This document shows positions 10,001 to 50,214 of a DNA stretch of 64,000 bases, piece after piece. The translations under genes and the position numbers were made by a program. The notes below the pieces were generated by a model that was not told the origin of the DNA, ran no database searches, and saw nothing but the letters and a program-made list of their open reading frames with translations. The stretch covers positions 68,448,001 through 68,512,000 of the forward strand of contig CM097886.1 in assembly GCA_044892525.1 (NCBI GenBank), given 5' to 3'. This DNA is from Schmidtea polychroa (taxonomy: Eukaryota). Positions within the stretch are counted from its first letter, which is position 1, and each line of letters starts with the position of its first letter.

Positions 10001-13000
10001 CTTTCAAAATTCTTTAAAATTGTAAAAATCTTCTATAACAAAATTTTTAAAGAAATTCCAAACTCAAGAATTAAACAAATTATAAAAGACTTTCAATTAT
10101 CTGGATTCTCATTAGCAAATGTAGTATTAGTTAAGTATTAGAAAATAAAACTGGTAAAATTGTGAATACTCAGATTTCTGAAATTCCAAAAAACTTTGGT
10201 TAGTGACAAAGAAAATAAAAAAAAATTCTTGTAAAGATTATCCAAATTTTTTATTTTTTCTAACTCCTCGAATAAACAAGAATCGACTGTAAGGTTAAAT
10301 TAAATAATTTCACATATATTGGAAATATTACAATGTAATTTTAACACTTTCGGGGACAGTTCTTTTCATTAAAAATTTCAATACTTTTTGTGTTTTCATT
10401 AAAAATTAATAGCAATCACAAATTTTACCGGTGTATCAGCCGAGATGTCAGATAATATTAAGTTTTCTGTACTTATTTCTTTAAGATTATGGATTTATGG
10501 AGACAGAATCTATTATTATTTTAATATAAAATTTTTCCGTAAAAAACTCTGCAAATCAAAAAACTAATTTGACAATATATATATTAGAAGAAATAAGACT
10601 TACAACTTCTCCTCGAGTTCCCTTTAGACCAGTTTTACCTAGAGGACCAACATCTCCTTTTTCACCGTCAGGTCCAATTGGACCTACTGAACCCTTTCTT
10701 CCTAATAAGCCACGAACACCTTTCTCTCCTATTGGGCCCTGTGGTCCAGGATTTCCTACCACGCCTTTCCCGCCCTTATCACCTGGACTTCCTGCAACTC
10801 CAATAGGTCCATTTGGTCCAGCGGGACCCGAAGGACCCTGAGATCCAGGATCTCCACGCTCACCTTTATCACCTGTTGGTCCTTGAGGACCTAATTTGCC
10901 TCTATCGCCTTTAGAACCGAGCTCTCCAGTGGGTCCTGATTGTCCTCTAGCTCCTCTTAATCCTTGTGGTCCTGGGTTTCCAGGTTGACCTCTTGGACCA
11001 AGATCACCCTTTGGTCCCTATATATTTAAATAAATAAAAATGTTACTCATTTAAATTTTCTGATAAAGTTAAATAATAAACTATGTCTTTAATCTAGAGC
11101 TTTTTATGATTATGATTCTTTATGATTCTTTACTATTATAAATTTTTATATAAAAGTTTCACTTACTATTAAACCTTCTTTACCATCAATTCCAGGTTTT
11201 CCTGGTAAACCAGATGGACCTCGAGTTCCTGGTGGCCCACGCTCTCCCATTGAACCTTGTTCACCTGGTTGGCCTGGTGGACCCTGCATGCCAACTGGAC
11301 CATTTTCACCTGGAGCTCCTGATTCACCAGTTTCACCTCTTTCTCCAGGATAGCCAGGTGGACCCGGGCGACCAGATGTTCCCTATTTTTAATAAAAATA
11401 ATACCAAAATCGTATAAAAATACCGGTGGTCCCGCTACTCCAATGAACCCAATTGTACCTCTTGGACCTACTGGTCCAACAGGTCCTGGCATTCCTGTAG
11501 GCCCTCCCGGTCCTTGCTCACCTTTTGAACCTAATGTGCCAGATGGCCCTGGTCCACCTCTTGGACCAGGAGAACCTAAAGGACCAACAGGTCCATTGCC
11601 ACCAGGTGTTCCAGAAATACCAGGATCACCTTTTTCACCATCTCTACCCTGATTACCTATAGGTCCTCTACTTCCTTTTATACCAAGATTTCCTGCATAA
11701 CCTGGTGGACCTACTGATCCTTCATCTCCCTAAAGAAATTAAATATTTTAATTCAAAATTAAAATTTACTTTATTTCCATCTTTTCCTCTAGGACCAGTT
11801 TCACCTTGTATTCCAATATCACCTTTAACTCCTGCAATTCCCTCGGGGCCTCGTGGACCTTGAATACCATTTTCACCTTTTACACCTTTCATTCCTACTT
11901 CTCCACGTGTTCCAACCTGCCCAGAAGGACCATGATCTCCTTTAGCCCCAGAGCTCCCCCTAATTCCTCTAGCTCCTTTATATCCCGATGGACCAGTAGT
12001 TCCCATTTCTCCAGGAGGACCTGACGGACCACCATCACCTTTTTCTCCCATATCACCCTGAAATCAAATTTTAAAATAAAGGCTTTTTGATTCTTAATAA
12101 AAATCATTAAAATGTAAACTTATTAAAGATATTTCAATTAAGAACTCTGAATTAATTCATTCTTAGATAAAAATGATCAACAAGTAGTTTCAAATATCTA
12201 ATTATATAAATTTCGATTTGGAGTGAATCTATTTGAGATCTAAAATCATTCAATTAATAAACACTATAGAAATGGCTTACCTATTTATTTTAATTATGTA
12301 CTTATTTATATCAGTGCTGTCTATTAGTTATTAGTTCAAGTAATTAAGAAAATTTAAAGAAAAAAATTTACTAACATAATTATTAATGAGAAAACTGCGT
12401 ATTTTTATGGGCAGCTACAAGGGCTTCGATATTAATATCAATTTGGATTGAAGAAACTCTTAAAATTTCTTCTAATGTTTTGTCGGCCATTGAAATTCTA
12501 TATTTAGATTTGATATATTTCGTGTCGGAAAAAGCTCGTTCACAAATATATCTACTACCAAACATAGAAAATAATTTTAAACACAAATCGCGCAATTTTG
12601 GATATTTTTCTTTTCGAAACATTTTGAATAAATTTAAGCCAGTCTTCGGCCTTGATTTAAAAAATTCGAATGCTTGCAATTCACATATTTCAATTTGATA
12701 CATAATATCGGTTTTTTCAAAGTCGACGGTGAACCGATTTGGTCAATATTGAGTTTAATTTTTCGCTTTTGTGTGCGATTTTTTTCGGAAATTGGATTTT
12801 TCTATATGTGCGCACAAAGGCTCGAACAAGGTATTATGAATTTTTGAGTGGTTTAATTTTCGATGATTATGAATTTTGGATTTATTTAGATTTTTGGACA
12901 TTTGTTTTGATTTGGAAGTTGTTTTAAAGAGGGGAATTTTTAAAAATTGTATTTTTTATTGTTATTGGTAAATAAAAGTTTGTGACGTTTATGATTTATA

Positions 13001-22000: not shown

Positions 22001-25000
22001 TTAAAAAAGGTATTGAAAATCTTCTGGATGAAATATTAACATACTATAAAATTATAATGATTATAAAATTTTAATTGTATTCTGGATTTGTATGAAAATG
22101 CTATTTGAATTATTTGTAAAAAATGTCTCAAGGAAATTTCTTTTAAAAAATAACAATTAGAAGAGCTAATTAGATTTTCACAAATTACATTTAAATAATT
22201 TGATGAAGCTTATATTTTTTATTTAGTAACATGGAGTCCGATGAATTAAATAGGATTATGACTACCGTATTTTAGCGCGTATAACCCGCGGGTTATACAC
22301 AATTTTTTTTAGTTGTTTTGAAGGGCAAAATTTGGGTAAAAATGGGTGCGGAAAAAACGTTTTTAAATATTCTTTTTTATTTAAAATTTAAATTTTTATT
22401 TAAACTCATTGTTTTTAACAAAATTAAAATTTATTATATTTCTTCCATTATAAATTTTTGAATTTGATCAAACAACACAAATTTATGTAGTTATTATAAT
22501 AATATTAAGTAAGGTTTGATATTTCAAAATACATAACTTTTAAATAAAGAAGGAAAATATTACATAAAAACACTTTTCAGTGTAAAAAAAGAATTTTTTT
22601 TCAGAATAATACAAAATAAAAATTTTAAAAAATTAAAAAATTCATTTAAAAATACGGGGAAAAGTGAGTGCTGGTTATAGACGATTTTTTAAAATTTTTA
22701 AACATTTTCAGTGTTGGTTATACGCGCTAAAATACGGTAATTAAATATATATTTATTGCGAAATTATAAATATATTTAATTTATTAATTTTAAAATTATT
22801 TAGAAATTAATTATATCAAATTCTTCTATTCTTACTGTCCATCAGTTAAGTCAAATTCAAATGGAAGATTCATGAAAGATGTTGAAGACGGATCTCGATA
22901 TCTTAGAGTAATTTGCCTGCCATATGTAACAGCAAGAATAATGTTGTTATTTTTATTTCTTATTGAAAATACATCCTGAGAATCCAATGCCTCTGATTTC
23001 GCAGTGATCAAGATTGAGAATTCCTTTGGAAATTTCCCTGAATTTAATTTAATGTAAAAAAAATTATCACAATGAAAGATAATTGAAAAATTATGTACAT
23101 TTTTTGAGATTATTAAGAAAATGTCATCAATTCAAAAAATCAAATAATTTATTCAAAAATAATATTTACACTTTTCTTAAAATACATATTTTAAATACAA
23201 CAATGGGAACTAAAGGAATATTTTGGTTATTGGAAATATACTTCCAAAAACGATCCAACAGTTTATTGTTATTGGACATCAACATTTAATATATGTTTAT
23301 TTCAAATTTGATTTCATACTTTTTACATCAGTTTTAATATTTTCCCCGTCTCTCGATTGTATCGGTATGAACATTATTGACTGGGTCGGATAAACGAAGT
23401 TCCCCCTCCTTTAAATTGAAATTTTCGACTATTTTGCTCGCCATTCATTGGAATAAAATTGTGTTGTGTTTCGCATAAAGTAGCTCAAAATAAGTTGAAT
23501 GTGCAAATTGATAAAATGCCAAAACCAATAAAATCAAAATGACTTATTCCGAGGGAAATCGGCATGTACAGATAGTAAGCGCGGAGACGGGATAAGGATA
23601 CAATAATATGAAACCAATGGGTGGTACCCAGAAAAAGATATTCAAAAATATGAATTAATTAAAAATAAATAAATTATTAATTAGCTATGTGGAAAACCAA
23701 GCCATGTAGAAAACTTGAACCATGTGAGTTAAACAAGATGGCTATGAAATTAGACGTTTCAAAATCGATAAAAATTATTAGTTTTGAATTAGCGAGACGA
23801 GACGTTTGAACGAAAGCGAGTAGGCACCTAATTAATTGGTTTTTGCTTTCCACAAATTTTGGTGGATGGCTCATTCAATTATCTACAAATATACAAAGAA
23901 ATTACATAGTTGGGCAAAAGCCAGTTGATTGAAGAGAAGAAGCTGCGACATTTTGACGTAACGAGTAAAAAAATTAAATGTGTCAATTCAAATTTGTAAA
24001 AAAGGAAAAATGATAGTCAAATCTGATAAAAGCGATCCCTTAGGGTTACCTACTTTCTGATTTTCATAGATATACATGATCAGTTTCTTGAAACCTTTTA
24101 AAATTCAAATTTAAAATTCATTCTCAAATAAAACTAACAAATTTCAAAATGTATATTTAATCTTTAAGATCAAAAAACAACCTTTTTAGTCANNNNNNNN
24201 NNNNNNNNNNNNNNNNNNNNNNNNNNNNNNNNNNNNNNNNNNNNNNNNNNNNNNNNNNNNNNNNNNNNNNNNNNNNNNNNNNNNNNNNNNNNNNNNNNNN
24301 NNNNNNNNNNNNNNNNNNNNNNNNNNTTTAAGCCTTTTGCTGCAAATAATGTATTTAATGAAAGAATTTTGACTATGCGATAGTCCTTGTCCAATAACAA
24401 TAAACTGTTGGATCGTTTTTGGAAGTATATTTCCAATAACCAAAATATTTCTTTAGTTCTCATTGTTGTATTTATTCCATTGAGATTGACAAGGACTATC
24501 GTATAGTCGAAAATTCTTTCATTAAATACATTATTTGCAGCAAAAGGCCTAAATTATCATTTTATTGTTTTAAATAATAAATGCTGCTANNNNNNNNNNN
24601 NNNNNNNNNNNNNNNNNNNNNNNNNNNNNNNNNNNNNNNNNNNNNNNNNNNNNNNNNNNNNNNNNNNNNNNNNNNNNNNNNNNNNNNNNNNNNNNNNNNN
24701 NNNNNNNNNNNNNNNNNNNNNNNNNNNNNNNNNNNNNNNNNNNNNNNNNNNNNNNNNNNNNNNNNNNNNNNNNNNNNNNNNNNNNNNNNNNNNNNNNNNN
24801 NNNNNNNNNNNNNNNNNNNNNNNNNNNNNNNNNNNNNNNNNNNNNNNNNNNNNNNNNNNNNNNNNNNNCTTATAACATTAATAATTTACTAATAATTAAT
24901 GACAAAATGAACATTAAAATTAACCTTGAAATAAAACATCGCTTTTTGCCATTAGACTATTTCCAGATTCATATCTGAATGCTTTTCGTCGAGAATTTCC

Positions 25001-25313: not shown

Positions 25314-26937
25314 AGTCGTTATGGGACTGCTGAATTGACAGAGAGATATATTTTAATTCCACAATTGGATTTTCGACTGATATTTTTTTTAATTGTTCGA
25401 TGTAAAAAAATATGACTAAATAGATAATAAAATGAAAATAATAAAATTATTAAAAAAATATATTCACATACATTTACAAAATAATATTAATGCCAGTTAC
25501 TGGATTCATTGGTAGGCAGCACTTTTTTGCCATGTACAACAGTTGAAAATCTGTAAATCGAATGATGCCATACAGGCCTAATGGACATTCATAGACAAGT
25601 CTGCATGTGCACAAATGTGTGGATGAAAATGCAATTTATCGATTTGGGATTTAGTAAAGGTTACAACTTTTTCTATAATTGTGCCATTTTTCAAATAATA
25701 TTAGACAAATCATTAGGAATTCCATCAATATTAGACTTTTATTATTTGAAAATTTGATATTGACGATTTGTATATATTATTTATATTTTTTTGTTTTAAT
25801 AATCGATATTTTATTTGCCGATTATAAGTGTACAAAATAATTATCAAACCTGCCATAATTATTTGACATTTTGCTAAATGTTACTTTACTTATTTCTCGG
25901 TGACAATTTTACGTTTGATCAAATTCTTCACAAAATTCTGATACATTTAAACTCTTGATTTTTCACGAGAAGAGAAGAAAAATTTTCACTTTATTATCAT
26001 TTTATGTATTTTATCATTTATTAACGCTTAACGCAATTTTGAACAGCAGATTTTCCTATTTTAAGATCGATGGGACAATTTTGATCATTAGGAATTTCAA
26101 TCTGGCCGGNNNNNNNNNNNNNNNNNNNNNNNNNNNNNNNNNNNNNNNNNNNNNNNNNNNNNNNNNNNNNNNNNNNNNNNNNNNNNNNNNNNNNNNNNNN
26201 NNNNNNNNNNNNNNNNNNNNNNNNNNNNNNNNNNNNNNNNAAGGTTTTTCTTCAATGAAATTATTTAATTATAATTTTAAAGTTAAGTAAGATACTTTTA
26301 AGAAACTTTGACTTCTGAGAAATCAAAGTAAATAAGTCAATTAAATTAATAATTTTAAATTAAAGTAATATATTATTTTAAGAAATGATGGGGCCTAAGA
26401 AATTTAAAAGTAATTTAATGAAATTTATAAATTTATTTTGAAATAATTTCAAAGTTAGTTTTAATGAAAGAAATTTTTGTAAAAATGTATCAAGTGATGT
26501 ATCAATAATAATAATTATTATTATTATAATGTTTGCGGCGGTTGTTATTTGTTGTTGATGTATGTGTGTAATAAGGAAATTTGTAGAGCCCAATAGAGTC
26601 TCCTTTAAAAAATAATGTTTCGGGACAGTTGGGGTACTTTTATATTAATTTTTATGAGCACAATAATAAAATGAATATTAAATTAACATAAAATGTAAAG
26701 AAAACAATAACAACGTTTATTACAAAAACAATAAACATAAACCATAGAATTTCCCTTTATATCCTATTATAGTTAAATGGATAGTAGTTGAGGATAAACC
26801 GTTTTCAAATCGTTATTTTATCTTCTAAAATTCTTGATTTTTCTTGTAAAATTGCTTGTAATTTTCCTTTTTAAATTTTCATTTTTATTGATTTTTTTAT
26901 TTTTGTAATTCTATATAGTTTATATTGTTATTAAGTG

Positions 26938-27160
26938 AAAGTGGTCCAACTAAATCCAGGTGAACTATTTCGAATGGTTTTGTTGTTGGGAATTTGACTT
27001 TTGTTGTAAATATTTTTGTAATTTTTTTTCTTGCATTTTATACATGAGTTGACGAAATCTTTTATGTCTTTTCTCATGTTTGGCCATATGACTTTTGTGT
27101 GCATGAGTTCGTATGTGGCTTTTGTTCCTGGATGGCAAATGTTGTGGAATTATTTGGTAA
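26938..27160 (-). mobile_element. Ty3/Gypsy integrase relic
   Basis: HPGTKATYELMHTKVIWPNMRKDIKDFVNSCIKCK (H2C2 zinc-binding) followed, after a frameshift, by PFEIVHLDLVGPL (rve start). Confidence 0.88.
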
Positions 27161-27803
27161 GTTCGTTTTTACATCCTCGAGTACTATAACTCTTTTATAG
27201 TTTTCGTTTGATACGTCTTGCCAAACTCCATCGATATCTTTTAGGTTTAATGAGTGGTGTTTTGGAAAGTTTTTTATAGTTGTCTCTTGTTTAATTTTGT
27301 AAAACTTTTGTAAAGAAAATTTTATAAAACTTTTTTATAAGAACCAGAACAATCCATAAAAATGACAAAATTCATCATGGCCACCAAACGACCCAATAAA
27401 AGAATATTTTAGTTAAAAATTATAAAATAAGAAAAAGATTAAATTTAACATGGAATGTTCTGGAAATGCCCATATCCATCATGGAGGCGAATCTAACAAA
27501 AATTAATTCAGAAATAAAATTTTGAAAATAAAAATAAAACTTATTACGTCAAAATCGCCATCAAAATTGATAAAAATTAAAAATCAAATGTTCTAGAATC
27601 TAGAATTAATCTTAATTCGAGTTTGTTTTACTGCACTAGTGCATGCACACAAACTTGCACACCAAAAATAGGGTATATATACCGACACATTTCAGTCACA
27701 AGTTACTCTTTATGCCAAAAAGTTTTTACTTGATCAAACTTAGTAGAACTCATTATTAATAAAATAAATAGTACAAGCTTTGTGATACCCAGTGCAAATC
27801 CCA

Positions 27804-27845
27804 ATAGTAGACTAGTTTCGAGCTTTTAGCTCTCATCAGTACTAT
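27804..27845 (-). ncRNA. Minimal type-I hammerhead ribozyme (Penelope/retrozyme-like)
   Basis: Minus strand reads AUAGUA-CUGAUGA-GAGC-UAAAA-GCUC-GAAA-CUAG-UC-UACUAU. It has a complete catalytic core, a 6-bp stem I, a 4-bp stem II, a palindromic short stem III (ACUAGU) and a GUC cleavage triplet. Confidence 0.9.
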
Positions 27846-29520
27846 GCAGGAGACGCACCAGGTAAGTATACAATATTGCTGATTCAACTCTATTGCATAC
27901 TTTCCCCGGTATATAGGAAATTACATCACTTGCAAATTAGCTTGGTCACAGAAAAAATCTGTAAACTTGTAAACATGGTGTATGAAAAATCATAATCACC
28001 TCTGTGGACTAAAAATTTAGTCGATACACAGAAATTGTTTACAAGTGCTTCAGATTACCTTTAGCATTTTTACTTCAAAACTTTTTTTTTTAGAAAAACT
28101 TTTTTGTTGGATGTCTCACTTGAATAAAATAAACAGTACAAGGCTGATTTCTAGTTTAATTGTATAATGTCATTTATGCTATATGCTTTATTAAAATCTA
28201 TGATATTCAGGTGTTTTTCTTTTTTTTTCTTTGTGTTCGTTAGATACACGGGATCCGAGCCAGTCTTGCGTTGATGGGTCCACAACCTACAACGACCTTC
28301 TAGGTCTATGACCTAGCATTCATCTAAATTGAAGATTATTTTTTACCAGGGGCGCTACAAACTATATAGTCCGATTATTGTGACTATGTGGGCAAATCAT
28401 GATAACTTATGGGTCTGACACTACTACAACGACGCTTTTTGTTGTAAAATCGACCAGCACACAACAATAGGACCTACCGTACCGAGCTCAGTGTGGCCGG
28501 GAAAGTAGGTAAATTTTAATTAAATTGACTTTCTGGGCATTAAATTACACACTTAATTTGGCATTCAAAGTATCATATTTACATAACCCTAGGAATTTAA
28601 AAAAACTGGGAATATCCCCTGACTCAAAAATATCACAATACAAGTATAAAGAAATGTAGTCGATTAAATTCCAATTAATTACTTATTTTTCCCGTTTTCA
28701 TGATTACTAAAATAATTGGGAAATCCCTGCCCAAATGTTCAAAAATAACTATACGACATAGTTAAATTCCTAAACTACCTATAAAATATAAGAATGGGTC
28801 AACAAATCGATAAACTCCCAATAATCACAATTCTGGCATACTAACCTAAATCTAGGATAAGTAGTGTCGAACAAAATCATAGCGCTAATTTACCACGTCT
28901 AATAAAGTTGATAGTAGGGTAGGAGTTGTTATTATCACTGAAGTTGTGGAAATTTCTAACAATATTTATCACTAAAATTCGTGCCAATAAACTCTTAGGT
29001 AACTGCCCACACAAATACTGCTACCTTAAACACTTACTCGTATCTCAAACCCACAAAATGAACACAATATGTCTTTAAACGTAATAGAAAATTCTCTAAT
29101 AGTCCACCCTCTCAACCCACCCCCTGATAGAATATAATGATATATATTACGGTGGTCAATTGGAAATTCCACCAATTTGGTAACGACTATCCTTATCATT
29201 CCTATTATTACGACCTACGTTACCGTCATTACTAATATTCTTGCTACATTGCTATCATTATCATTATTAGGAGGATTACGATGATCATTGTTATTATGAT
29301 TGTCCACCTAGTTATTATTATCATTTTCTACTCCTATCATAGTTATTGTAGTAAATTGTTATATTTTTATTGTTTTTATTATTTATAACAAAATCCCAAT
29401 TAGCATTATTTTTGTTATGACAGTGTTTGTTTCCAAAATGTCGAGGAAACAAAATGTTAAAAAAACTATATAGCGATAATTTACTACCGTAAAAATAAAA
29501 AATTAATAATACATTAGATA

Positions 29521-29972
29521 CGAAATTTCAAAGTGTGGATAATAAACAATAAAATTCTATCTATTCAACATTTCCAAAAATCTTTTATTTAACCAGATTA
29601 TTGTCTCGAATTCTATCCCTATTTTACTGGACAGAAGAAGAAAGAATAATTCCAATTCAAACTATATTAAGTTTCAAAGTGGTAAGTAATAAACAATAAA
29701 TTTCAACAGACTCAACATTTACTAAAAATCTACTATTTAACGAGATTATTGTCCTGAATTCTATCCCTATTTTACTAAACAGAAGACAAAAGGATAATCC
29801 CAATTCAAACTATACGAAGTTTCAAAGTGGTGAATAATAAGCAATAAAATTCTATCTATTCAACATTTTCTAAAAATCCTTTAATTATAGCGTAATTACA
29901 TTATAGAATTCTACCCCAATATTTTTGAACAGAAGAAGAATAAACAATCTCAATCTAAACTAGACGAAAGTG
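29521..29972. repeat. Three tandem ~147-bp repeats
   Basis: tttcaaagtg anchors at 29526, 29672 and 29820. Shared internal motifs include gaattctatccctatttt and cagaaga. Confidence 0.85.
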
Positions 29973-30259
29973 ATAATATTACGTATATTATATGATGCGG
30001 TGAATTGCTCCAGTTAAGGTATCACCGAAAATCCCTAATGCTAATTAAGGTCCTTTAATTTTTTTTCATTAGTAAAATTTGTAAAGTTGAATTTGTTATT
30101 CGTATTTTGTTAATTTGTTAATCTGTAAACATCAGCACAAACAACAACACACATTCACCCCAGCTGTCCTGAGACCGTTTTTACAGGAGACTCGGCTGGG
30201 TCCTAACAGAATTACTATACTACAACATACGACAAATAAACATACAACAAACGAGAAAA

Positions 30260-30780
30260 CTAACATAACAGTTTTCATTATTATTATTCTCGTTATTATC
30301 ATGATTATCATCATTATTACCGTGTGGTCAGTATTGTTATATGGCTATTATGATAAATATTGCCTTTCCTATCGAAAGAAAACCCCACTATTGTTAATAT
30401 TATTTCCTAGAATCATCATGATTTTTTTCATTACCATCGCATTATTGCTATTATCATGATTAGTATCGTTAAGCAGAGTTCCCTCAGTAGTACTATTGAG
30501 GTAAATGTTGATATTATGGCTTTATCATTCTTGGTATGGTTAGGATTATTAATAACTTCGATCATTATTATTATTATTATTAGCTTATTATTTTCTTAAC
30601 AAAGTTACCATTATTACCAAATGTTATCAATATCATTAGTATCACTATTTTACTATTATTATTATTATCATATTACTCTACTCCGATAACCATGTTTACT
30701 ATCATTATCATCATTATTTTGGTTAGTACGTAATCCTTAATTTTATCTTTAATCATTTTTTAAGATGCAGTTGACTATTT
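30260..30780. repeat. Decayed (ATT/ATC)n low-complexity tract (similar tract at about 29200-29420)
   Basis: Dense attattatc/atcatt trinucleotide-periodic sequence. Confidence 0.75.
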
Positions 30781-31259
30781 TACTTAAATTTTAAAAAAAT
30801 TACTAATTTAAGAATCCCCTTATCGCTAAAATTAGCATTAACAGACCCATCTCCCAATAAAATTACAGTAAAACACGAAATGCTATTTTTAGCAACAACC
30901 ATAACCCCTAACAACGAACAGAACCCAGAAAATTCAGCACTACCACATCTACCAGCTACACGCCACCTCAGAATAATTAGACAATCACCGTAGGCATAAT
31001 TTTCGTTTCCCATAGTAATTATATGAAAGTTTAACCGATTTATTCTAGGATGAGTCACAACAATATTCAGAACGTGCAGTGCGGATCCGGCCAATCATCG
31101 ATAGGATTCCCCCACGAAACTCAGCCATAATGGAAAGGGCCCCACACTGGGCCCGAGATATCACTAGTCAAGTCAGTCAACCGGCTCAGGACCGAGTGGA
31201 TCTGACACAAAATCCACTCGTGGGTTAACGAGGAATGAGCCGCGTCTGGTCGTTCCCTC

Positions 31260-31586
31260 ATGGTCATTGAGACGTCACGGGAACCTGAAGCCCCAATCTG
31301 GGTCAAGGAAGAGGTACAGAACAGACCAGCTCCAGAGGCTCGGATGCGAGCCGTGTCCAACGTGATATTGGCAGTGGCCAAACTCAGGGAGGTGGAGCAT
31401 CAGATCCGTACCGGCGAGCTAGAAGACTCGGGAGGAGAGGCCCTTCGGAGCACCGACGCAGATTGGCTATCGTCGGTCAAATGGGAGCTGGCACCACTTC
31501 CGGCAAATCCAAACACCACACAGCCATTTCCATCGGTAGTGCCTAAGAAGAAGGGAAACCTCCGGAAGACGGTGCCAAAGAACTGA
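31260..31586 (+). CDS. Orphan GC-rich ORF, copy 1 (108 aa), probably mobile-element derived
   Basis: ATG-started 327-nt ORF with ungapped protein similarity to 33387-33713. Family not recognised. Confidence 0.45.
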   Translation: MVIETSREPEAPIWVKEEVQNRPAPEARMRAVSNVILAVAKLREVEHQIRTGELEDSGGEALRSTDADWLSSVKWELAPLPANPNTTQPFPSVVPKKKGNLRKTVPKN

Positions 31587-33386
31587 AGGGTTTCTCCCAT
31601 CGATCTCTCCTCGGGGCAAGTGTGATCATATGTATTTACTGTGACGTAGTTATCGAAATTTCGTTTATTCTATTTGTAGATAAGTAGTGTTTTATATATC
31701 TTGAGTGTACGATGTTTATTCCTTTACGTATTTGTAATGTTCTTTATATACATTTAAAGCGTTTTGATCATTTGCATTATGGGTTTGCTCAGACAAGAAG
31801 TGACAATTATATAACCTGACCGGCCATGTTGTTGGAGGTCGAGTGAAGATAATCTAACGGCGGCAGAGGATAGAATTCATTCAGGTAAAGGTGCAGAGAA
31901 ATCTGGGAAAGTTTCTCGGTTGAAACATATGTGGTATGTTTTGGAAAGCGGAGAAATAAAACCATGATAATCGACTAATTAATCCTCAACTCCCCTAACA
32001 TAACGCAACCCTAACTTATGTAACAACTCCAACAACAATGTTCAAACGAATACTCGTAAGGAAAATAAATCCCGGCAATTTATTGGGGTAACTGTTGACA
32101 TACAGTACAATATTAAGTAAATTTTATTCACAGTTTACTTGAATTGATAAAATGTATTATAAATAAATCCTAAGTTAATTAACATTAAAGAAAAAGATCA
32201 TATTTTATTCAATCAAACTTAAACTATAATAAATCCAATCCCGCTTAACATAAAACAACTCCAAATAAGGAGAAAGATTATCTTCCATAGAGGGTAGAGC
32301 AAAAACTAACTTACAAGTATATCTCAAAGGGAAATTGATCTTCATAAAATCTATTATATCGATAAAAATATAAACCCAAAGGGGGTATTAGAAAATTTGC
32401 TGTGAACCGCATAAAAGATTAGAATTTTCATTACCTAAAAATCCTAAAATAACATAAATGAAAAAATTTGAAAAAGCCTCCACTAAGCGGAAGTATGATG
32501 ACAGATAAGTTGCAGTAAGTAGCAGCACCAGCGGGGAAACGTTGTGTCCAAAATCGGAGCCAATGAATCGCTGTTGGTGAAACCCTCTCTTGAAACCTAT
32601 AATTTTGGAAACAAAATAAAATTAGAAAAGCTCATTGTATTTTAAAATTAAATTAAAACAGTAAAACAATAGTATTTACGAGGGTGAAATTCTTAATATG
32701 GCAGGCTTACAAAAGACAAGATCATTTATGTTGATGATAAGATTTCAGTTTTGGCTAAACTAATTCTAAAAATGGAATATTGGAAATAAGGTAATTTCCC
32801 ATTATTAAACCAAATAAAAAACTTAAAATGGAGTTTAATTTTGGAATCGCGTTGAGATGGATAATTTATTCAACTTGTGATTTAAGAATAGATATTAAGA
32901 TTGAGATATTCTTAAATTATTTTTTACCGCAAGCAATTAAACCTGAGCTAGGCTTAATGATAGGAAAAAGGTACCTACCTTAGGATTAGGAGTTAAAATA
33001 AGGCACATTCGAATGCATGAGTGCGTGTTTGTTTAGGGTACATTAGAATGTGTGCATATGTTTGAAGATATGGGAATACGGTTGGGTGAGAGTGAGTGGT
33101 GAGCGGGATAAGAGTTAAAATAGAGCCGATGGGAGAGAGACGCTGTAAATTTATGTCATTTAGAAATACCCAATCAGAAAAGGAAGGAGGACAATTGCGA
33201 AGCCGGCCCGTCCTCGGCGAGTCGATATCGAGACGCCCAGTGGGAGCGAGAGGAGGCCCGAGCTTTCCAAACCCTCCTACGAAGAAGTCAATAACCAAAC
33301 CCCGATACGGGTGGAGTTGGCACAGAGTCCACTCGTGGAACGAAGATTACCCAATCGAGCCGAGTTGATGCTCAAAGGTTTTCCGA

Positions 33387-33713
33387 GTGGCGAGGGGAGG
33401 AACAGAAGGCAAAACCTTCACGATCCTCCTAAAACAGGAGCTGAGAATGAATCCGGCACGGATGGTTCGACTCCAGGCGCTCACAGACATCAGTCAAGCG
33501 ATCGCGCGCCTTCGACAGATTGAACGAGACATCCGGGTTGGCATGATTGAGAACACAGACGGGAATGTCCAGTGTCAAATAAGCACGGGTTGAATGGCGG
33601 AGATTGCCACACTACAAGGACAATCCAGCTGGGATTCTCGCTCAACCCAATGGCTTCAAGGAGAAGGTTCCAGGAAGCGCTGGAGACCCGGCAAGTGGGC
33701 CGATATGAACTAA
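33387..33713 (+). pseudogene. Orphan GC-rich ORF, copy 2 (108 codons, internal TGA at codon 69)
   Basis: GTG start aligned with the ATG of copy 1. TILLKQELRMNPARMVRLQALTDISQAIARLRQIERDIRVGMIE aligns to PIWVKEEVQNRPAPEARMRAVSNVILAVAKLREVEHQIRTGELE. TGA at 33591 aligns with TGG at 31464. Confidence 0.45.
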
Positions 33714-34909
33714 TATTGACTTGAATTTCAGCAAGCGAAAAAAATTATAATTACATAATAAACCTTGTTAATTAATTGAATCTTGTTGAAATGATTGCGG
33801 ATGTTTGTAAGGAGCAATAATGAATGTTATAATTTATTTAAACCTTGGTGTTTGCGGATTAAGAGTGTATCTCAAGGTATTGAATGTTGAAATTGAATGT
33901 GGGAAACAGGAAATGTCGAGCTATAGTGGAATATATGATCATCGAGACGACTATACATCTGTTGGGGCTTAACAAGAGAGGTACAAAAAATGAGGTGAAA
34001 AATCAATAAAAACACCAAATTCACAATAATAAGTTAAAGTACAAAAATATTAATTAAAAATTCAAAAAATTTAAAAATTAATATTTTCCGGGGCATACCG
34101 GTATGGGTGGTTACCGAATAATGAGACGAGTTCAAATATAATAAAATAAAATCAATGTACGCCACTAGAAGGAATTAATTACAAAAAATAAAAGTTAATA
34201 AAGAACCCGAGCTAATGGGAAACCCGAGACAATGGATAATCCGAGTGATGTGAGAAAACCTGAATGATCATTAAATTAGCCGATGAATAATTTAATTGGG
34301 GGAAAGCCGTCAAAGGAGAAACTCCTTAAAGTAAGTAGAGGACTTGAGTTGAGTTTTGAGTTAATTTCAAAAAGAACGCAAAGAAGTCAGACAGTGCCGG
34401 CTTGCCCAAAATACTCAACACATCTAAATACAGGGACATTTTGTTGAATGCGACCCCGAATAAAGAACTTAAACTGAAAAACCAGGGTTGATTTACACTT
34501 AAGTTATTTTCATATTGATTTGGATACCTTTAAGCTCAAATAAATTGAATTTCGTTTAATGATACAACTTATGTAGAAAATGAGCAACAACAAACTAAAA
34601 GTCTAGAACGAAGAATTACTAAATTCAAGGTGCGGTGCCGATAAGTGTTTAGCCCCACAGACATGCTGAAGCGCCTGACGCTGGTGCAGCAGCTGCAGCT
34701 CCAGGGCGCGCAGGATCAGAGCAAAATAAAGGTCCGGAAATGAGAAAACTAGCTCCACCAAAGGTACCTCGATCAAGATGTGGCTGAACAAATTAGCCCA
34801 GTTGCCGTGGAGCTGGCAGAAATCCACCCACCAGTTAGACAAAGAGGAAGCTCCCGGGTAGAGCAGCTCGGGAAAGGCTTAAGTGGACTCGCCTAGCAAT
34901 TTCCATAAT

Positions 34910-39200: not shown

Positions 39201-42200
39201 ATTTCAAAAAATTTTAACTGTTGAATCAGTAAAAATTTTTATCTTTTTCACTTTTGGTATATTTAAAATTTCATTTTCAATTTAATTTACAGATTATAGA
39301 GTATTTTTATAAATTCCCGGTTAAAATGGTAAAGGTTAAATATGTAATTAATATCATTAATATTATTTAATCAATATATAATTATATATTGATTAAATCA
39401 GCGATTCTCAACCTGTGGGGCGCGAGTATATTTAAAAACAAAATTAAAACTTTGTTGAAGGTTAAATAAAAGAAATTGTATAATTAAAAAATTAAAAAAT
39501 AATTACATATTACCAATAAATAATTTATTATATTTACTATTTAAGTTTATTAGTATGAAGCAAATACCTGTTAAATATGTTATGTTATTAATTAATGACT
39601 TCCTTGAGCCTGTTTTTCATTGCAAAGTTTTTGAAATGAAGGAGTAATACCAGATATTCTTTTTCTATATTTAACTGTGATTTGTATTTTGTTTTCAACG
39701 AAGCCACCACAGAAATCCGGTTTCGCAAAGATAAGATGTGGAAAACGGTAAAAGTATTTGAAAAGCTCTTCGTTTTAATGTCGCCAACTCGTCATCCAAA
39801 CCAGCCCAAAATTCAAAAATCAATTTCTTATTAAATTGTCTTTTGATTTCACTGTTTGTTGTAAAATCAATATAAGTTTCCTCTTCAGAAGTCGAGAGAT
39901 CATGTGGAACATTGTGATATGGGTCCCTAACCCACTCGTAACTCGCTAGAGATTTTTATTCAGCAAAAAAGTATTTTTTATAATCTTTTGCTAGCATGCT
40001 TAGATGTTTGTATGTCTTTACAAATTCATTTATATTCGGAAACATTTCCAATTGCCCACATACTGCACACACATACAATGGCAACCTCCCGAAACTCATA
40101 TGCATTCGGAATTAGCAGATGGGACAATACCCCAACCTCCCACTACTTGTGTTAGGCCTGTGTTTTAGTAGGCGTTGGTATAAAGGGTAGGAATAGACGT
40201 ATACAGGGATTGCATATTCGAAATTCGTTTTCATAAATATATTTTCGAATTTCGAAAATTTCCCAGCGAATTCCGAATTTAAAATTTATTTTTTCGTGCT
40301 ATCTCCAACTTGTAAATTGTGTTTTCGTTCTGTACATATTAATATTCTACATTCTATAAGAAGACATAAAAAAGACAATGCAAAAATACAGTTATTCTAC
40401 ATAATACAAGTAGGCATAGAGTAAACATTTCTAAATTGCAGCTAAACATTTAAACGGTTTCATTTCTTCATTTCATATCCATATGTAATAATAATAAATG
40501 TAAATTACAATATGTAATTACATTATGTAAATCACATTTATTACATTATGTAATGTAGCATAAAATTTCACACAACATTTTATATTTCGTATAACTTCGT
40601 GTTCGTGTCTTATATTTACGATTTGCAATAGTGTTGAGATTTGTTTAATCGAGTATAGTGTATATTGAAATATTTGGACTTTGTTTTCTGTACAATCATC
40701 AATATTTTTTAAATAGGTAAGTAAATAATAGCAGTTTTAATTTAATAATTAAACTATTTTTATTAGAATATCCCAAAATATCATCAAAAGAAATTTATTC
40801 GGAATACACAAAGCAATATAAAAATCAAAATTCTGTTTGGATTCATTTTTTGAGAGGATCAAAAAGAATAACTAATATGTAATGAAATAGTAAAAACTTC
40901 TTGTTCAACGGCAACACCGCAGCACACGCATTTAAGAACAATATACAATATTAATGTATTAAAACGTGATTTAGTGCAAGATAAAGTTCCAGAAAGCAGC
41001 TCATCAAAAATGATGATTACAAATTATTTAGTCAACAAAAAAGATGAACAACTTTCTGCAATTGTATCACTAATGTGTGCCTTAAAAAATATGCCATTGA
41101 AAGTTTTTTGTACGTCTATCGATTTGAGAAATTTATTTTTGATCTAGAGGCGCTCGAGATTATGTACTACCAAAATCACCTAACTCAATTCGCAAAATGG
41201 TTTTAGAATACGCACAAAAAATACGTACTAAAATGATGCAGGATTTAATTAATCTCAAAGAAGATGGAACTCGATTTTGCTTAACTATAGATGAATGGAC
41301 ATCATCAAGAAACCGATGTTATTTAAATGTAAATGTCCATGGCAAGAAACAGTTTTGGAATTTAGGTTTAGTTCGTGTTGAAGGACGTTTCCCTGCAGAG
41401 AAATGCATTACGGCCCTGAAAACCACATTGCAAGACAACAATCTAAATATCGATAAAGATATTACGTCCATAACAACTGATGAGGCAGCTGTGATGCAAA
41501 AAGTTGGGCGACATTTACGATGTAATCAGCAGTTGTGCTTTGCACATGCGATACATTTAGCTGTAGTTAATGTTTAAATAATTTTATGTTTTAATATTTT
41601 AAATAATATATTTTTAACTATTATTATATTGTTATGTAATAATTGAATTTGTGTACAATTTACATTTATGTTTATATTTCATTTTAAATATAATTTTATG
41701 TTCCATTTTTATTTTAAAAAAAGTAATATTATGCAATAAATAACAATAAATTATCTCAAATAATTTATTTTTATTATTTGTATAGACTTAAAAAATTAAT
41801 ATTTCGGAATTCGATAGAATTCCGATTTTTTTATTTTCCTCGAAATTTGCAATCCCTTTGCAATACATTACTGTGCATTTATAGTAAACAGTCGCATTTT
41901 ACCAATAAAATTAAATGTACGAATATCGGACCGTTTTCATTATGACACTATAATTTTCGATAGATAAAAAAGGGGGGTGCGAGAATATTTACGTTGGTAA
42001 ACTTGGTCGCAATAGCAGAAAGGTTGAGAAGCGGTGGATTAAATGATATTGATAATTATTATATCATCATGGCGATTTTGTAATTAGAAATGTTTTTTAA
42101 TTTTTTATTTTTACTTCGGTTTAAGCTTGACTTCTTAGTTTAAGATGTAGCACAAAGATCAATTATATAACTTGAATAAATCATAACAATTAATATTCCA

Positions 42201-45200: not shown

Positions 45201-48200
45201 GCAAACAATATCAAATAAAATGATTATTAAATGTAAAATTATAAAACTAACCTCCTTTAATTTTACATCTACAAATTGGAGGTGAACATAAAATTTCTTT
45301 TTGTTTCGTAGTCAATCCGGGATTACAGGTATCAGGGCGCAACAACTGTTGACCAGACACATCAGGCGGATGCACTGGCACTGAACAAGTGTCAGTTAGA
45401 GTGGCATCAAGATAACTATCATCCAATAAAGACATTGAATGCAAACCGGGGACATCTTTATCGATTGAGGCAGCATGACTCCCAGAACTAAGAGTTGCTG
45501 TTTTACTAGACACTTGTTGGTGTGACGATGACGACGAATCACGTTTAAACCTTATACTTTTACTACCAGCTCTGCGAATATTAATTATTTATAATATCAC
45601 CGGTTTGCTAATGTTACTTTTTTTTATAATTCGATTTCCTACCTCCTCCACCACATAAAAGCGATGAATGAACAGAATCATCTTCCTATAAAACAATTAC
45701 AAATTTAGATTTCAAAACGAATTAATAATGAATTTATGTAAACAACTACGGTAAAAAGAGTGATCTTACTTTAGTAAATTATAAAAACCAAACAGAGCAA
45801 TTCGATGGAATATAAAAGTTAGATGGTATGGTAAATTTAATGTGACAATTTTTTGAAATATTTAATTGTCATTTAATATAACCATAAATTAATAATCAAT
45901 ATAAATATATTGTTCAATAGTCATAAATTAATAATTAATATAAATATATTCAATAGTCATAAATTAATAATTAATATAAATTTAATATTCAATATAGTCA
46001 TAATTAAAATATCAAAAAGCACGAAATGTGATTTCTGAAGAAAAGCGAGAAATGATAATTCATTGGTATAAAACGATTAAAGAGTTTCAAAGTCTTCTGC
46101 AAACCATTCCTAGAAAATTCATTAATAACGCAATTAAAAAATTAAGTGTCTCAGAAGTAAGAATTATTAAATTGACCGAGGCGAATAAAAATTGGACTAG
46201 AAATTTGAATGAACTTAAAAATTTGACCATGGAATAAACTTGGTGTGTTATAAATATTAATTATATTTTCACTACTATCAAGATATCCGTAAGCAAATAT
46301 AATGGTGTGATATAATTATGGAATAACTTTACGGCCCAGCAAAATTATTTTCAAGGATAGTCTCTTTTTTATAGATGACGTAGAATTTTATCTTTTTATT
46401 AGGAGAGTGTAGAGGGTGCCTTTTCCCGGGTTTTTTTTTTCCCGTGAAACGGGAATTTAAAAAAAAATTTCCCGGGAATATCGGAAAACAGAAAAAAAAC
46501 CGTGAAAATTCTTTCTGGAGAAAAAGTTATAACCTTAAAATAAAAAAGGCATGTTTTTAACTAAAGTTTTAAAATAATATTCTAACCAATAAATAAATAC
46601 ATATTAATTGTATCTTTTTAAATTTATTGGTTTAAAAAATAAGTTTTTAAAAAACAAAGACAATCAAGCGAATGGTTGCTTAACGAAGTTCTTTTTTTGT
46701 ACAAAAATTTGACGACGCCGAAAATACCCTTTCACTTTCGAGTGAGCTGGGCTGTATCGTCATTAATTCATCCAATAAATCTTGCAAATTTTTTGTTATA
46801 TTTTTTGTACAACCGTATATTTGAAATTCTTGTTTTAAATTTTTTGTTCGAGTACCTGTAAATCTTTCTTCACACCTTTTAGCTTTTAATGCTGCATTTA
46901 TGGAACCATGTAGCTTTTCATTTATATCTAGAACTAAACAGTTTTGAGCTGCAGATGAATCTTCCTCGCAAAGTATATCGTCATCAACACCAGCGCATTG
47001 ATTCTCTTTTTCGAATAACCATATAAATATTTTGTTAGCACAGTGAATAATTGTAGCCATTGATGATAAAGGCAAGTCCAGTGTAAATTGTAAATCTAGT
47101 GTTTGAAGATACTTAATCAAAGTTACAAGATGTCGATTTCTCCGTTCTCTAATACGAATTATTAAACGTCCAACAACTCTTTTGAGATATTATTGTTGTT
47201 TCCACGCAAAGAGATTAACTGTTATTTAAAGTTTTAAAGAAAATTTTTTACAAATTAAAATATTGAATAATAATAAATATATAAACAATTACAATACGTA
47301 TTTGTTGCTTGTTAATTATGATTTTTTTCGAAATGATGTTAACATATAATTAGTAGAATTTATTCTAAAATAGATTTTTTAATAAAATTTGTATATACAT
47401 ATATTTATAAATATTGTATTGAGATAAAAATACTAAAATCTTATATATAGCAGTTTTATGTGTTGATAATTAAAAAAAATTATTTCTCGGGAGACACCCT
47501 CTAGGAAAGTGCAATGAATGTCATTGCTTGGTGAGTAAGTAATTAAGATAGTTTCAGCAGTATGAAATTGAATTTTTGACAGTAATGGAAAATTATTTGT
47601 TGTTGTAACGAGAACACCTCAAATTTCGAAATCCTTTTTAATGGAGGAAATTTATAGTTTGATCTATTTTGAATGAAAACTATAATGACTTGTTAAAAAT
47701 CAATTTTGACCATTGTTAAGTCGTAAAAAATGAAAAAAGAATATTATTCAAGAAAAAATGAAGTTCCAGCTAATTATTTAAGAAATTTAATTAAGTTTTT
47801 AAATGCAAATTCTAATTGTCTAGTCGACAAACCATAGTAGCGTTGATATGTATGGGAAAAATTGTTGCAATTTTCAGTAAATAAATAGTTTGACATCCAT
47901 TTTTATCATTTACTAAAAAAAATTTGAATAAAAATTTGTCGATTAAAAGGAAATAAATTGTAAACAGAAAACCGATGCAAAAATTAATAACTAAAAAATG
48001 TTTCATAAATTAAATTCGACTTATTTTTTGGAAAAAATGAAAAGAAAAAAATGAAAAATTTTCATTTGATAAATACCAGCACGCATTTCCGTGTTGAGAA
48101 ATTGGCAATTCAAAAATTTTCAAATGTAACAAACAGCTTTGATATAATGGCAAAATCGACAACCAGAAATATAATAATTTATCAAATTTGACTTCGAAAA

Positions 48201-49121
48201 TAATCTATTCAAATTTTTGATTTGATTTTAAGAATTGTGATGTTAAAATTAAATGAGAAATATATTTTAAGTAAATATTTTTCTATTTTTTTGATATTTT
48301 AAAATTTAAATGATTTTTTTCTCTCTAAGTGATTATTGATGCTTCACAAAAGTTATTTTAAAATCAAATAATTCGAATTTTTAGAATTTTCTCTAAAGTG
48401 TTCGATTTTCTAAAGTTTTTATAAGTAGAGAAATTCTAAGAATAGCAATAAAATATATATTTGAACATATTATATTGTATTGGTAATTTTGATTTATTAA
48501 GGAGGTCAGAAATGGTCAAATAACAAAAACTGAAGTGCAAATGTCATAGCGTTCTAATTAAAATGCAAAAAACTTCAATATTATCCTATTTCCGGGCTTA
48601 TCTCTAAAGTCTTCTTCATTTTGAAGCTTAATTTTTAAATATCACCTTCACTTCTTTTAAAGAATATCGATCAATATAACATTTGTGTTATCTTTTATTA
48701 ATTCTGAAATTATGCACCAGCTACCGTTATTACTCTAATTTACTATTAGATTATTATTGAGTCTTTCTAATCATTCCAGCATTTTCTAAGAAATATATTT
48801 TTGTGGGTTTCTTGGTTATATTTATGCTCAGTGGTGATATAATTGAATCAGGTGCAGATATGAAAAAATAAGATTGCAATTTCATAGGTCCGAACAATAG
48901 TTGAGAATAATTATTATTTTTATAAACAAAATGTTCTCAACGTTCAAAACTGGCTGATGTAAAATAAATAAAAATAATTAATGCTAGAAATGATTATAAT
49001 GATTAAAAATTAATAATAATAATAGTAAAAATAATAATTAAAAAAATAAATTAAATAATATTAATAATAAATAATAATAATAATTAAAAAATAAATTAAA
49101 TTATATTAATAATAAATTAAA

Positions 49122-49156
<35 letters not shown>

Positions 49157-50183: not shown

Positions 50184-50214
<31 letters not shown>

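What the first reader, a model, noticed from the sequence alone, without database searches (positions are those of the whole stretch)
27804..27845. Minimal type-I hammerhead ribozyme in TE-rich intergenic DNA
The full core CUGAUGA/GAAA/GUC is present, with stem I AUAGUA:UACUAU, stem II GAGC:GCUC closed by UAAAA, and a palindromic ACUAGU stem III. This is the architecture of minimal hammerheads in Penelope-like elements and retrozymes, which are thought to cleave as dimers. Predicted cleavage is between 27810 and 27809 on the minus strand. I saw no Penelope RT or GIY-YIG ORF and no second hammerhead in the window. It may therefore mark a solo pseudo-LTR or a non-autonomous retrozyme-like family at the edge of the unexplained 28-35 kb block.
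Basis: partly seen in the sequence, partly recalled or inferred. Interest (0 to 1): 0.8.

Follow-up and report, generated by a model that had tools for sequence, protein, structure and literature searches.

The report
Solo hammerhead ribozyme in retrozyme-like insert
The window really does hold a complete self-cleaving "hammerhead" RNA motif, sitting at the end of a small, tightly folded, repeat-flanked insertion in a flatworm-like genome; it looks like a stranded single copy of a known kind of ribozyme-carrying mobile element rather than something new.

Summary
The motif is at the stated coordinates on the minus strand. It has a full catalytic core, a 6-bp helix I, a 4-5-bp helix II, the palindrome ACUAGU in place of helix III, and cleavage after C 27810.

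The 42-nt motif alone is weak evidence. Rfam HH9 gives 22.5 bits against a gathering score of 52 (E 0.45 for the window). I estimate about 0.4-2.4 chance motifs of this kind per Gb of DNA this AT-rich.

- Helix I continues to about 22 bp with five G·U pairs; 1 of 3000 natural flank pairs does as well.
- The ribozyme closes a roughly 285-nt self-paired domain. The sense strand has z -6.3, the opposite strand -2.9. It is the only structured stretch in 26.3-29.7 kb.
- A 28-nt imperfect direct repeat brackets a 337-nt insert, with 365-nt spacing.

There is no second hammerhead, no tandem copy, and no RT or GIY-YIG ORF between 12 and 47 kb. I found no link to the 28-35 kb block.

Helix sizes match canonical metazoan type-I hammerheads of non-LTR retrozymes, not the Penelope min-HHR variants. 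My best reading is a solo monomer of a retrozyme-like (pLTR-related) element that could cleave only as a dimer.

No related copy could be fetched, so family conservation is untested. I rate it a new member of a known kind, of modest interest.

The parts
27804..27845 (-). It runs helix I 5' strand, CUGAUGA, helix II hairpin, GAAA, palindromic ACUAGU, C17, helix I 3' strand. The predicted cut is between 27810 and 27809.
   Evidence: Sequence read; only descriptor hit in the window; Rfam HH9 22.5 bits.
27786..27864 (-). Full hammerhead domain with extended helix I of about 22 bp. The pairings are 27864-27854 with 27796-27786 (11 bp), an internal loop, 27851-27847 with 27803-27799 (5 bp), a bulged C at 27846, then the 6-bp inner helix I. 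Five of these pairs are G·U. GC is 0.46 against about 0.25-0.32 around it.
   Evidence: Folds (78 nt: -28.6 kcal/mol, z -3.95). The flanks add -18.9 kcal/mol; 1 of 3000 natural flank pairs and 54 of 3000 shuffles of its own flanks reach this. GC.
27811..27816 (-). Palindrome ACUAGU (A15.1 to U16.1). It cannot form a hairpin within one molecule, but could give a 6-bp intermolecular helix III in a two-molecule hammerhead.
   Evidence: Sequence. The active-like monomer fold is -19.3 against an MFE of -28.0 kcal/mol. The same ACUAGUC element recurs in 15 natural metagenome loci.
27782..28065 (-). Self-paired RNA domain of about 285 nt, with the hammerhead domain at its 3' end. It contains a three-way junction, two further hairpins and the hammerhead arm.
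   Evidence: 365-nt unit: MFE -104.6, z -6.27 on the minus strand against -80.9, z -2.85 on the plus strand. In sliding windows it is the only structured stretch in 26.3-29.7 kb, and it is strand-asymmetric at 27750-28000. Circular fold z -6.5 to -7.9 with 66-67% of bases paired.
28066..28114 (-). A-rich, unstructured leader of the insert, lying between the upstream direct repeat and the folded domain.
   Evidence: Sequence; unpaired in the fold.
28115..28142 (-). Upstream copy of the imperfect 28-nt direct repeat. It is either a target-site duplication or the terminal redundancy of a more-than-unit copy.
   Evidence: Local alignment score 36. 0 of 300 shuffles (max 35) and 0 of 1500 natural 480-nt segments of the window (max 33) reach it.
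27749..27777 (-). Downstream copy of the direct repeat. It begins 9 nt after the 3' end of helix I. Start-to-start spacing is 365 nt.
26900..27334 (-). Neighbour, not part of the element: a short decayed piece of an LTR-retrotransposon integrase (zinc-binding H2C2 region and the start of the core). It is truncated at both ends and broken by stops and at least two frame changes.
   Evidence: Pfam Integrase_H2C2, E 4.5e-8 and 7.8e-14; three-frame reading.

Best explanation
This is a genuine type-I hammerhead ribozyme of the metazoan dimer-type class. It forms the 3'-terminal arm of a small (337-365 nt), AT-rich, highly self-paired non-coding unit that was inserted here and is bracketed by a 28-nt direct repeat. 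That makes it a solo (monomeric) copy of a non-LTR-retrozyme-like element, the class now thought to derive from Penelope terminal repeats.

Proposed mechanism:
- Minus-strand transcripts fold helix II and the long helix I in cis.
- Helix III cannot form within one molecule, and the monomer is predicted to sit in an inactive alternative fold.
- Two hammerhead domains, either neighbouring units in a tandem array or two separate transcripts, pair through the palindrome ACUAGU. Each strand is then cut after C17 (27810).
- In tandem family members this would release unit-length RNA that can be circularised and copied back into DNA by a helper reverse transcriptase.
- This copy has only one ribozyme, so it could at most cut its transcript once. 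It is most likely a dead-end relic.

Shown: the motif, the extended helix, the strand-specific folded domain, the direct repeat, and the absence of a partner ribozyme or helper ORF. Inferred: cleavage, dimer action, past retroposition, and the existence of a family.
For: - Complete core, canonical helix sizes and the G10.1-C11.1 pair.
- Best Rfam match is a hammerhead.
- Helix I extends to about 22 bp. The flanks add -18.9 kcal/mol, reached by 1 of 3000 natural flank pairs.
- The domain is far more stable on the ribozyme's sense strand (z -6.27) than on the opposite strand (z -2.85), because of G·U pairs.
- It is the only structured stretch in 3.4 kb.
- As a circle it folds with z -6.5 to -7.9 and 66-67% of bases paired.
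- A 28-nt direct repeat at 365-nt spacing exceeds all 1500 natural background comparisons.
- Unit size, low GC, a long target duplication and a self-paired RNA are the published traits of metazoan non-LTR retrozymes (PMC7229834).
- Monomer derivatives are common, intergenic, and 313-342 bp on average in invertebrates (bioRxiv 10.64898/2026.07.22.740005).
- Independent natural hammerheads share the ACUAGUC element, including a tandem pair whose helix I closes the unit (L005).
Against: - No related copy was found anywhere, so there is no covariation and no proof of a family.
- It is not tandem.
- The Rfam score is well below gathering (22.5 against 52).
- With its own GC-rich flanks shuffled, 1.8% of trials match the helix extension.
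- The direct repeat is short and imperfect.
- The loop-1 bases do not match the HH9 model, so tertiary contacts cannot be claimed.
- The monomer prefers an inactive fold by about 9 kcal/mol.
Confidence: 0.55

Rival explanations
1. It is the 3'-terminal piece of a 5'-truncated Penelope-like element (a solo pLTR fragment). The hammerhead would be the element's characteristic terminal fold, and the direct repeat the target duplication of that truncated insertion.
For: - Penelope terminal repeats carry type-I hammerheads, and most genomic motifs occur singly, 'probably related to truncated PLEs' (PMC4209133).
- The hammerhead is described as a 3'-terminal fold of such elements (PMC6431247).
- Here the domain ends 9 nt before the downstream repeat.
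- Retrozymes and pLTRs are reported to be related, so the two readings overlap.
Against: - No RT or GIY-YIG signal in stop-to-stop pieces between 12 and 47 kb.
- Helix sizes are canonical (6 bp and 4 bp, no extra base before 10.1) rather than the min-HHR form reported for metazoan PLEs.
- There is no second repeat copy.
Confidence: 0.2
2. It is a chance hammerhead-like motif inside an unrelated hairpin-rich repeat or decayed transposon fragment. AT-rich DNA throws up such motifs at about one per genome.
For: - My estimate is about 0.4-2.4 compact motifs per Gb by chance (plus scaling).
- Rfam E is 0.45 for the window.
- No family was found.
- The upstream half of the folded domain is symmetric on both strands, like a DNA inverted repeat.
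Against: - The motif would also have to coincide with a 16-bp continuation of its own helix I (p about 3e-4 to 0.02).
- That continuation has G·U pairs that work only on the ribozyme's strand.
- The motif sits exactly at the closing arm of the only structured domain in the neighbourhood.
- Jointly this gives well under 0.1 expected per Gb.
Confidence: 0.1
3. It is a host-retained (domesticated) hammerhead that processes a host transcript, in the way intronic or UTR hammerheads do in other animals.
For: The core is intact although the flanking repeat has diverged at about 4 of 28 positions. The best Rfam match is to HH9, an intronic family.
Against: - I estimate about a 9% chance that the intact core survived without selection, so selection is not needed to explain it.
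- No gene model is known to span it, and the surroundings are transposon debris.
- A hammerhead of this helix III type is a poor stand-alone cutter (PMC4209133).
Confidence: 0.07

Closest known systems
Non-LTR retrozymes of animals (small repeats with canonical type-I hammerheads; Cervera & de la Peña 2020, PMC7229834), including their monomer derivatives (bioRxiv 10.64898/2026.07.22.740005)
   Same: - Type-I hammerhead with 6-bp helix I, 4-bp helix II and a short palindromic helix III.
- Helix I continues into the body of the RNA.
- Unit of 337-365 nt, within the 170-400 nt range.
- GC 0.33.
- Highly self-paired RNA.
- A long flanking duplication rather than 4 bp.
- Intergenic position, and no ORF.
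   Different: - A single copy instead of a tandem array.
- No family members are available.
- Circular RNA and expression are unknown.
- Loop-1 and loop-2 contact bases cannot be recognised.
Min-HHRs in the pseudo-LTRs of Penelope-like elements (Cervera & de la Peña 2014, PMC4209133)
   Same: Type-I topology, helix III reduced to a palindrome so that a dimer is needed, frequent occurrence as lone motifs, and a position at the end of an element.
   Different: - Metazoan PLE min-HHRs are described with helix II of 6-8 bp, helix I of 4-5 bp and an unpaired base between positions 9 and 10.1. None of these applies here.
- There is no RT/GIY-YIG ORF and no second terminal repeat in the window.
Rfam Hammerhead_HH9 (RF02275) and clan CL00010
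   Same: The core, the 4-bp helix II with an A-rich loop, the 6-bp helix I, and a further helix beyond an internal loop all align over the full model.
   Different: Helix III and its loop are deleted. The score of 22.5 bits is far below the 52-bit gathering score. HH9 is a conserved intronic family of amniotes, not a flatworm repeat.
Sm-alpha / Sj-alpha SINE-like hammerhead repeats of schistosomes (as cited in PMC2770079)
   Same: Flatworm host, and a small non-coding repeat carrying a type-I hammerhead.
   Different: No sequence similarity could be tested, because no comparator sequence was obtainable through the tools. Those repeats occur in thousands of copies, whereas here only one copy is visible.

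Membership tests
Hammerhead ribozyme, type I | Conserved core: CUGANGA, GAAA, the A15.1-U16.1 pair, and H (not G) at position 17 | tested here: met
   All core bases are present at 27839-27833, 27819-27816, 27811 and 27810.
Hammerhead ribozyme, type I | Helices I and II flank the core, with a G10.1-C11.1 pair and helix I open-ended | tested here: met
   Helix I is 6 bp, continuing to about 22 bp. Helix II is 4-5 bp and starts with G-C.
Hammerhead ribozyme, type I | A stable helix III within one molecule | tested here: not met
   Only A-U closing the 4-nt loop CUAG can form. The active-like monomer fold is 8.7 kcal/mol above the MFE. This is the known dimer-type condition (PMC4209133), so it does not argue against the class.
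Hammerhead ribozyme, type I | Reaches the Rfam gathering score of a hammerhead model | tested here: not met
   HH9 scores 22.5 bits against 52.
Hammerhead ribozyme, type I | Loop 1-loop 2 tertiary contacts | tested here: inconclusive
   Loop 2 (UAAAA) resembles the HH9 model's A-rich loop. The internal loop or bulge in helix I does not match the model.
Hammerhead ribozyme, type I | Self-cleavage | not testable with these tools
   No activity or RNA-end data were available.
Non-LTR retrozyme (animal) | Tandem repeats of 150-450 bp, each with a type-I hammerhead | tested here: not met
   There is one hammerhead only, no tandem unit and no decayed neighbour copy. Monomer derivatives of such families are described.
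Non-LTR retrozyme (animal) | Unit of about 170-400 nt, GC below 50%, no ORF, no LTR/PBS/PPT | tested here: met
   337-365 nt between and including the direct repeats, GC 0.33-0.34, and no Pfam domain.
Non-LTR retrozyme (animal) | Highly self-paired RNA on the ribozyme strand | tested here: met
   z -6.27 linear and -6.5 to -7.9 circular, with 66-67% of bases paired. The opposite strand has z -2.85.
Non-LTR retrozyme (animal) | Target-site duplication longer than 4 bp, when present | tested here: inconclusive
   A 28-nt imperfect direct repeat is significant against the background. Without an empty site it cannot be told apart from terminal redundancy.
Non-LTR retrozyme (animal) | Multi-copy family in the genome; expressed as linear and circular RNA | not testable with these tools
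Searches of metagenome, viral, prokaryotic and protein collections found no relative.
Penelope-like element (pLTR hammerhead) | Adjacent ORF with RT and GIY-YIG domains | tested here: not met
   Pfam scans of ORFs and stop-to-stop pieces between 12 and 47 kb found only integrase H2C2, hAT and collagen matches plus a few weak, unrelated ones. No RT or GIY-YIG domain appeared.
Penelope-like element (pLTR hammerhead) | Two direct terminal repeats, each with a hammerhead | tested here: not met
   One hammerhead, and no long direct repeat around it.
Penelope-like element (pLTR hammerhead) | Min-HHR form: long helix II, short helix I, extra base before 10.1 | tested here: not met
   Helix II is 4-5 bp, helix I is 6 bp or more, and there is no extra base (compared with PMC4209133).

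The most novel reading that the evidence does not exclude
The copy marks an undescribed retrozyme family of a free-living (planarian-like) flatworm lineage. Its tandem members would be expressed as abundant small circular RNAs. Alternatively, this particular copy has been kept by the host as a transcript-processing ribozyme. I found no report of hammerhead repeats in planarians in the searchable literature.
Probability: 0.3. Interest if true: 0.45.

Novelty: new member of a known kind. Interest (0 to 1): 0.35.

Why it matters
If a family stands behind this copy, it would extend ribozyme-bearing circular-RNA retroelements to another flatworm lineage. It would also give a handle on which helper (a Penelope-type element or another) moves them there. 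In itself, a lone dimer-type hammerhead in transposon debris is an expected feature of invertebrate genomes. The practical lesson for the scan is that the 42-nt motif is not significant genome-wide in DNA this AT-rich. What separates a real ribozyme relic from noise here is the continuation of helix I, the strand-specific folding of the surrounding unit, and the flanking duplication.

Tried and rejected
1. Rfam at gathering score found nothing. In E-value mode it found only a sub-threshold HH9 match.

2. Search for a second or decayed hammerhead or a tandem unit:
   - The descriptor scan found none.
   - blastn of 27200-29000 against the window found none.
   - A relaxed alignment of the upstream region against the ribozyme region was not significant; 66 of 300 shuffles reached it.

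3. Search for related copies elsewhere:
   - The metagenome pattern scan gave 15 loci. They are other hammerhead families that share only the core.
   - The viral scan gave 4 unrelated hammerhead-like matches that share only the core with the window.
   - The prokaryote genome scan gave 0.
   - ORF pieces lying across the unit were used as bait in the protein collections and found nothing.

4. Penelope or other helper ORFs: none between 12 and 47 kb.

5. Link to the 28-35 kb block: no shared repeats, no Pfam hit, no homologue. I rejected it as related.

6. tRNA or SINE nature of the GC-richer stretch 28215-28520: no tRNA and no Rfam match.

7. Exact look-up of the kinesin ORF to name the species: not on record. 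The homologue search points to flatworms only.

8. Slips, disclosed. I disregard that result (no match) and draw nothing from it. In my reasoning I also wrote an approximate integrase zinc-finger motif from memory for an eye comparison.

Full report
**Observation.** On the minus strand, 27845-27804 reads as follows:
- AUAGUA
- CUGAUGA
- GAGC-UAAAA-GCUC
- GAAA
- CUAG
- U, then C
- UACUAU

This is the full hammerhead core with G10.1-C11.1, a 6-bp helix I and a 4-bp helix II (5 bp with an AAA loop in the MFE fold). The palindrome ACUAGU stands where helix III should be. The cut would fall after C 27810. My descriptor scan finds no other hammerhead on either strand of the window.

**Is the motif more than chance?**
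- Rfam gives nothing at gathering score.
- In E-value mode the only ribozyme match is Hammerhead_HH9, 22.5 bits against a 52-bit cut-off. E is 0.0049 for 701 nt and 0.45 for the window.
- The low score is largely the price of the missing helix III.
- In 48 Mb of Markov sequence with this window's composition (GC about 0.27), a loose descriptor hit 6 times and the compact palindromic form never.
- Scaling these counts, I expect about 3e-5 to 1.5e-4 such motifs per window, but about 0.4-2.4 per Gb.
- So the bare motif, picked out of a genome-wide scan, proves nothing on its own.

**New evidence from the flanks: helix I.** Helix I does not stop at 6 bp.
- After a bulged C (27846) come 5 more pairs (27851-27847 with 27803-27799).
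- Then comes a 2x2 internal loop, followed by 11 pairs (27864-27854 with 27796-27786).
- The total is about 22 bp, five of them G·U.
- With the 42-nt core held fixed, the real flanks add -18.9 kcal/mol.
- Only 1 of 3000 flank pairs taken from elsewhere in the window does as well, and 54 of 3000 shuffles of the real, unusually GC-rich flanks.

**New evidence from the flanks: the folded domain.** The hammerhead arm closes a self-paired domain of about 285 nt (28065-27782).
- The 365-nt unit folds at -104.6 kcal/mol, z -6.27, on the ribozyme's strand.
- On the opposite strand it folds at -80.9, z -2.85.
- In 150-nt sliding windows over 26.3-29.7 kb, this is the only structured stretch.
- At 27750-28000 the structure is specific to the minus strand.
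- Folded as a circle, z is -6.5 to -7.9 with two thirds of the bases paired.
- Structure that depends on G·U pairs exists only on one strand, and that strand is the ribozyme's. This is what one expects of an RNA element, not of a DNA inverted repeat.

**New evidence from the flanks: the direct repeat.** A 28-nt imperfect direct repeat lies at 28142-28115 and 27777-27749.
- Start-to-start spacing is 365 nt.
- It brackets a 337-nt insert whose 3' end lies 9 nt beyond helix I.
- Its alignment score (36) is reached by 0 of 300 shuffles.
- It is also reached by 0 of 1500 natural segments of the window, where the maximum was 33.
- Motif, helix extension and domain together bring the chance expectation well below 0.1 per Gb.

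**Surroundings.** The window is animal DNA of a flatworm-like organism.
- A single-exon kinesin-14-type ORF (60102-62792) has its best named relatives in trematodes at 46-52% identity.
- Its closest relatives are unnamed sequences at 90% and 68%.
- The very low GC suggests a free-living, planarian-like lineage. That is inference only.
- Around the finding lie hAT-type transposase fragments, collagen-repeat ORFs, and a short decayed integrase piece of an LTR retrotransposon on the same strand about 0.5 kb downstream.
- The integrase piece is truncated at both ends and broken by stops and at least two frame changes.
- Pfam scans found no RT or GIY-YIG domain. They covered the large ORFs, all minus-strand pieces of 45 aa or more in 24.9-31.7 kb, and all pieces of 70 aa or more on both strands in 12-47 kb.
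- Nothing ties the ribozyme to the GC-richer block at about 30-34.6 kb. There are no shared repeats, no Pfam match and no homologue.

**Relatives.** I could not reach the source genome.
- A metagenome scan for the core plus ACUAGUC, with free helix II, returned 15 loci where under one is expected by chance.
- These are several genuine hammerhead families. They include a tandem pair 727 nt apart whose helix I closes the unit (L005).
- They share only the core with the window.
- Viral and prokaryotic scans found nothing related.
- Two protein-space searches baited with ORF pieces lying across the unit also found nothing.

**What it is and how it would work.**
- The helix sizes (I = 6 bp, II = 4 bp, III = 1-2 bp with a small palindromic loop) are those given for canonical metazoan type-I hammerheads (PMC4209133).
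- Such hammerheads reside in non-LTR retrozymes: 170-400-nt, low-GC, ORF-less, highly self-paired units with long target duplications (PMC7229834).
- The Penelope min-HHRs differ. They have a longer helix II, a shorter helix I and an extra base before 10.1.
- A recent preprint reports that monomer derivatives of retrozymes are common and mostly intergenic, that units average about 313-342 bp in invertebrates, and that retrozymes are related to Penelope terminal repeats.
- The copy here fits a monomer derivative.
- As a monomer, its active-like fold lies 8.7 kcal/mol above an inactive alternative.
- Cleavage would need two domains paired through ACUAGU, as described for this class.
- With one ribozyme per transcript, no unit-length or circular RNA can arise from this locus, so it is most likely a relic.

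**Rivals.**
- A 5'-truncated Penelope end (0.2).
- A chance motif in a hairpin-rich repeat (0.1).
- A host-retained ribozyme (0.07).
- The intact core does not by itself show selection. Given the divergence of the flanking repeat, I estimate about a 9% chance that it survived unchanged without selection.

**Verdict.** It is a new member of a known kind, with interest about 0.35.

Noticed in passing
window 28215-28520 (read on the minus strand): A GC-richer stretch of about 300 nt ends in an A-rich run just upstream of the ribozyme unit. It looks like a retroposed SINE-type insert, but it has no tRNA and no Rfam match.
   Followed up: partly
window 29518-29968: A tandem array of about three 148-nt units at 77-84% identity. 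It holds no hammerhead and shows no similarity to the ribozyme unit.
   Followed up: partly
window ~30100-34600: A block with GC 0.37-0.38 sits in DNA of GC about 0.25. Two plus-strand ORF pieces (31239-31583 and 33369-33590) share a similar peptide stretch about 2.1 kb apart. There is no Pfam family, no homologue for the first piece and no DNA repeat. It remains unexplained.
   Followed up: partly
window 23192-23278 and 24388-24474: An 87-nt inverted repeat, 98% complementary, with arms 1109 nt apart and a masked N run between them. It is possibly the ends of a young DNA transposon or a foldback element. The N run was left as it is.
   Followed up: no
window 26900-27334 (-): A decayed fragment of an LTR-retrotransposon integrase (Integrase_H2C2, E down to 7.8e-14). 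It is truncated at both ends, with stops and at least two frame changes.
   Followed up: partly
window 167-598 (+), 5362-6654 (+), 12386-12742 (-), 41143-41577 (+), 46683-47189 (-): Several hAT-superfamily transposase fragments (Dimer_Tnp_hAT, DUF4371, DUF659) are scattered through the window.
   Followed up: no
window ~8500-12700, e.g. 9195-9716 (-): A GC-richer region (0.38, with strong negative GC skew) holds collagen triple-helix repeat ORF pieces. It is probably exons of a collagen gene on the minus strand.
   Followed up: no
window 60102-62792 (+): An uninterrupted 896-aa ORF with a C-terminal kinesin motor (kinesin-14 type). The best named relatives are trematode proteins at 46-52% identity, and an unnamed sequence reaches 90%. 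This is the basis for calling the organism a flatworm.
   Followed up: partly
window 48960-50660: Extremely AT-rich low-complexity arrays (AAT/AAAAT-like) run into a masked N run.
   Followed up: no
L005:319-1075 and L004 (~9014-9048 and 11003-11033): Metagenome contigs carry two type-I hammerheads each, all with the ACUAGUC element. In L005 they are 727 nt apart, and helix I closes the unit (z -2.3). In L004 they are about 2 kb apart. They look like tandem retrozyme-like elements of unknown marine hosts.
   Followed up: partly
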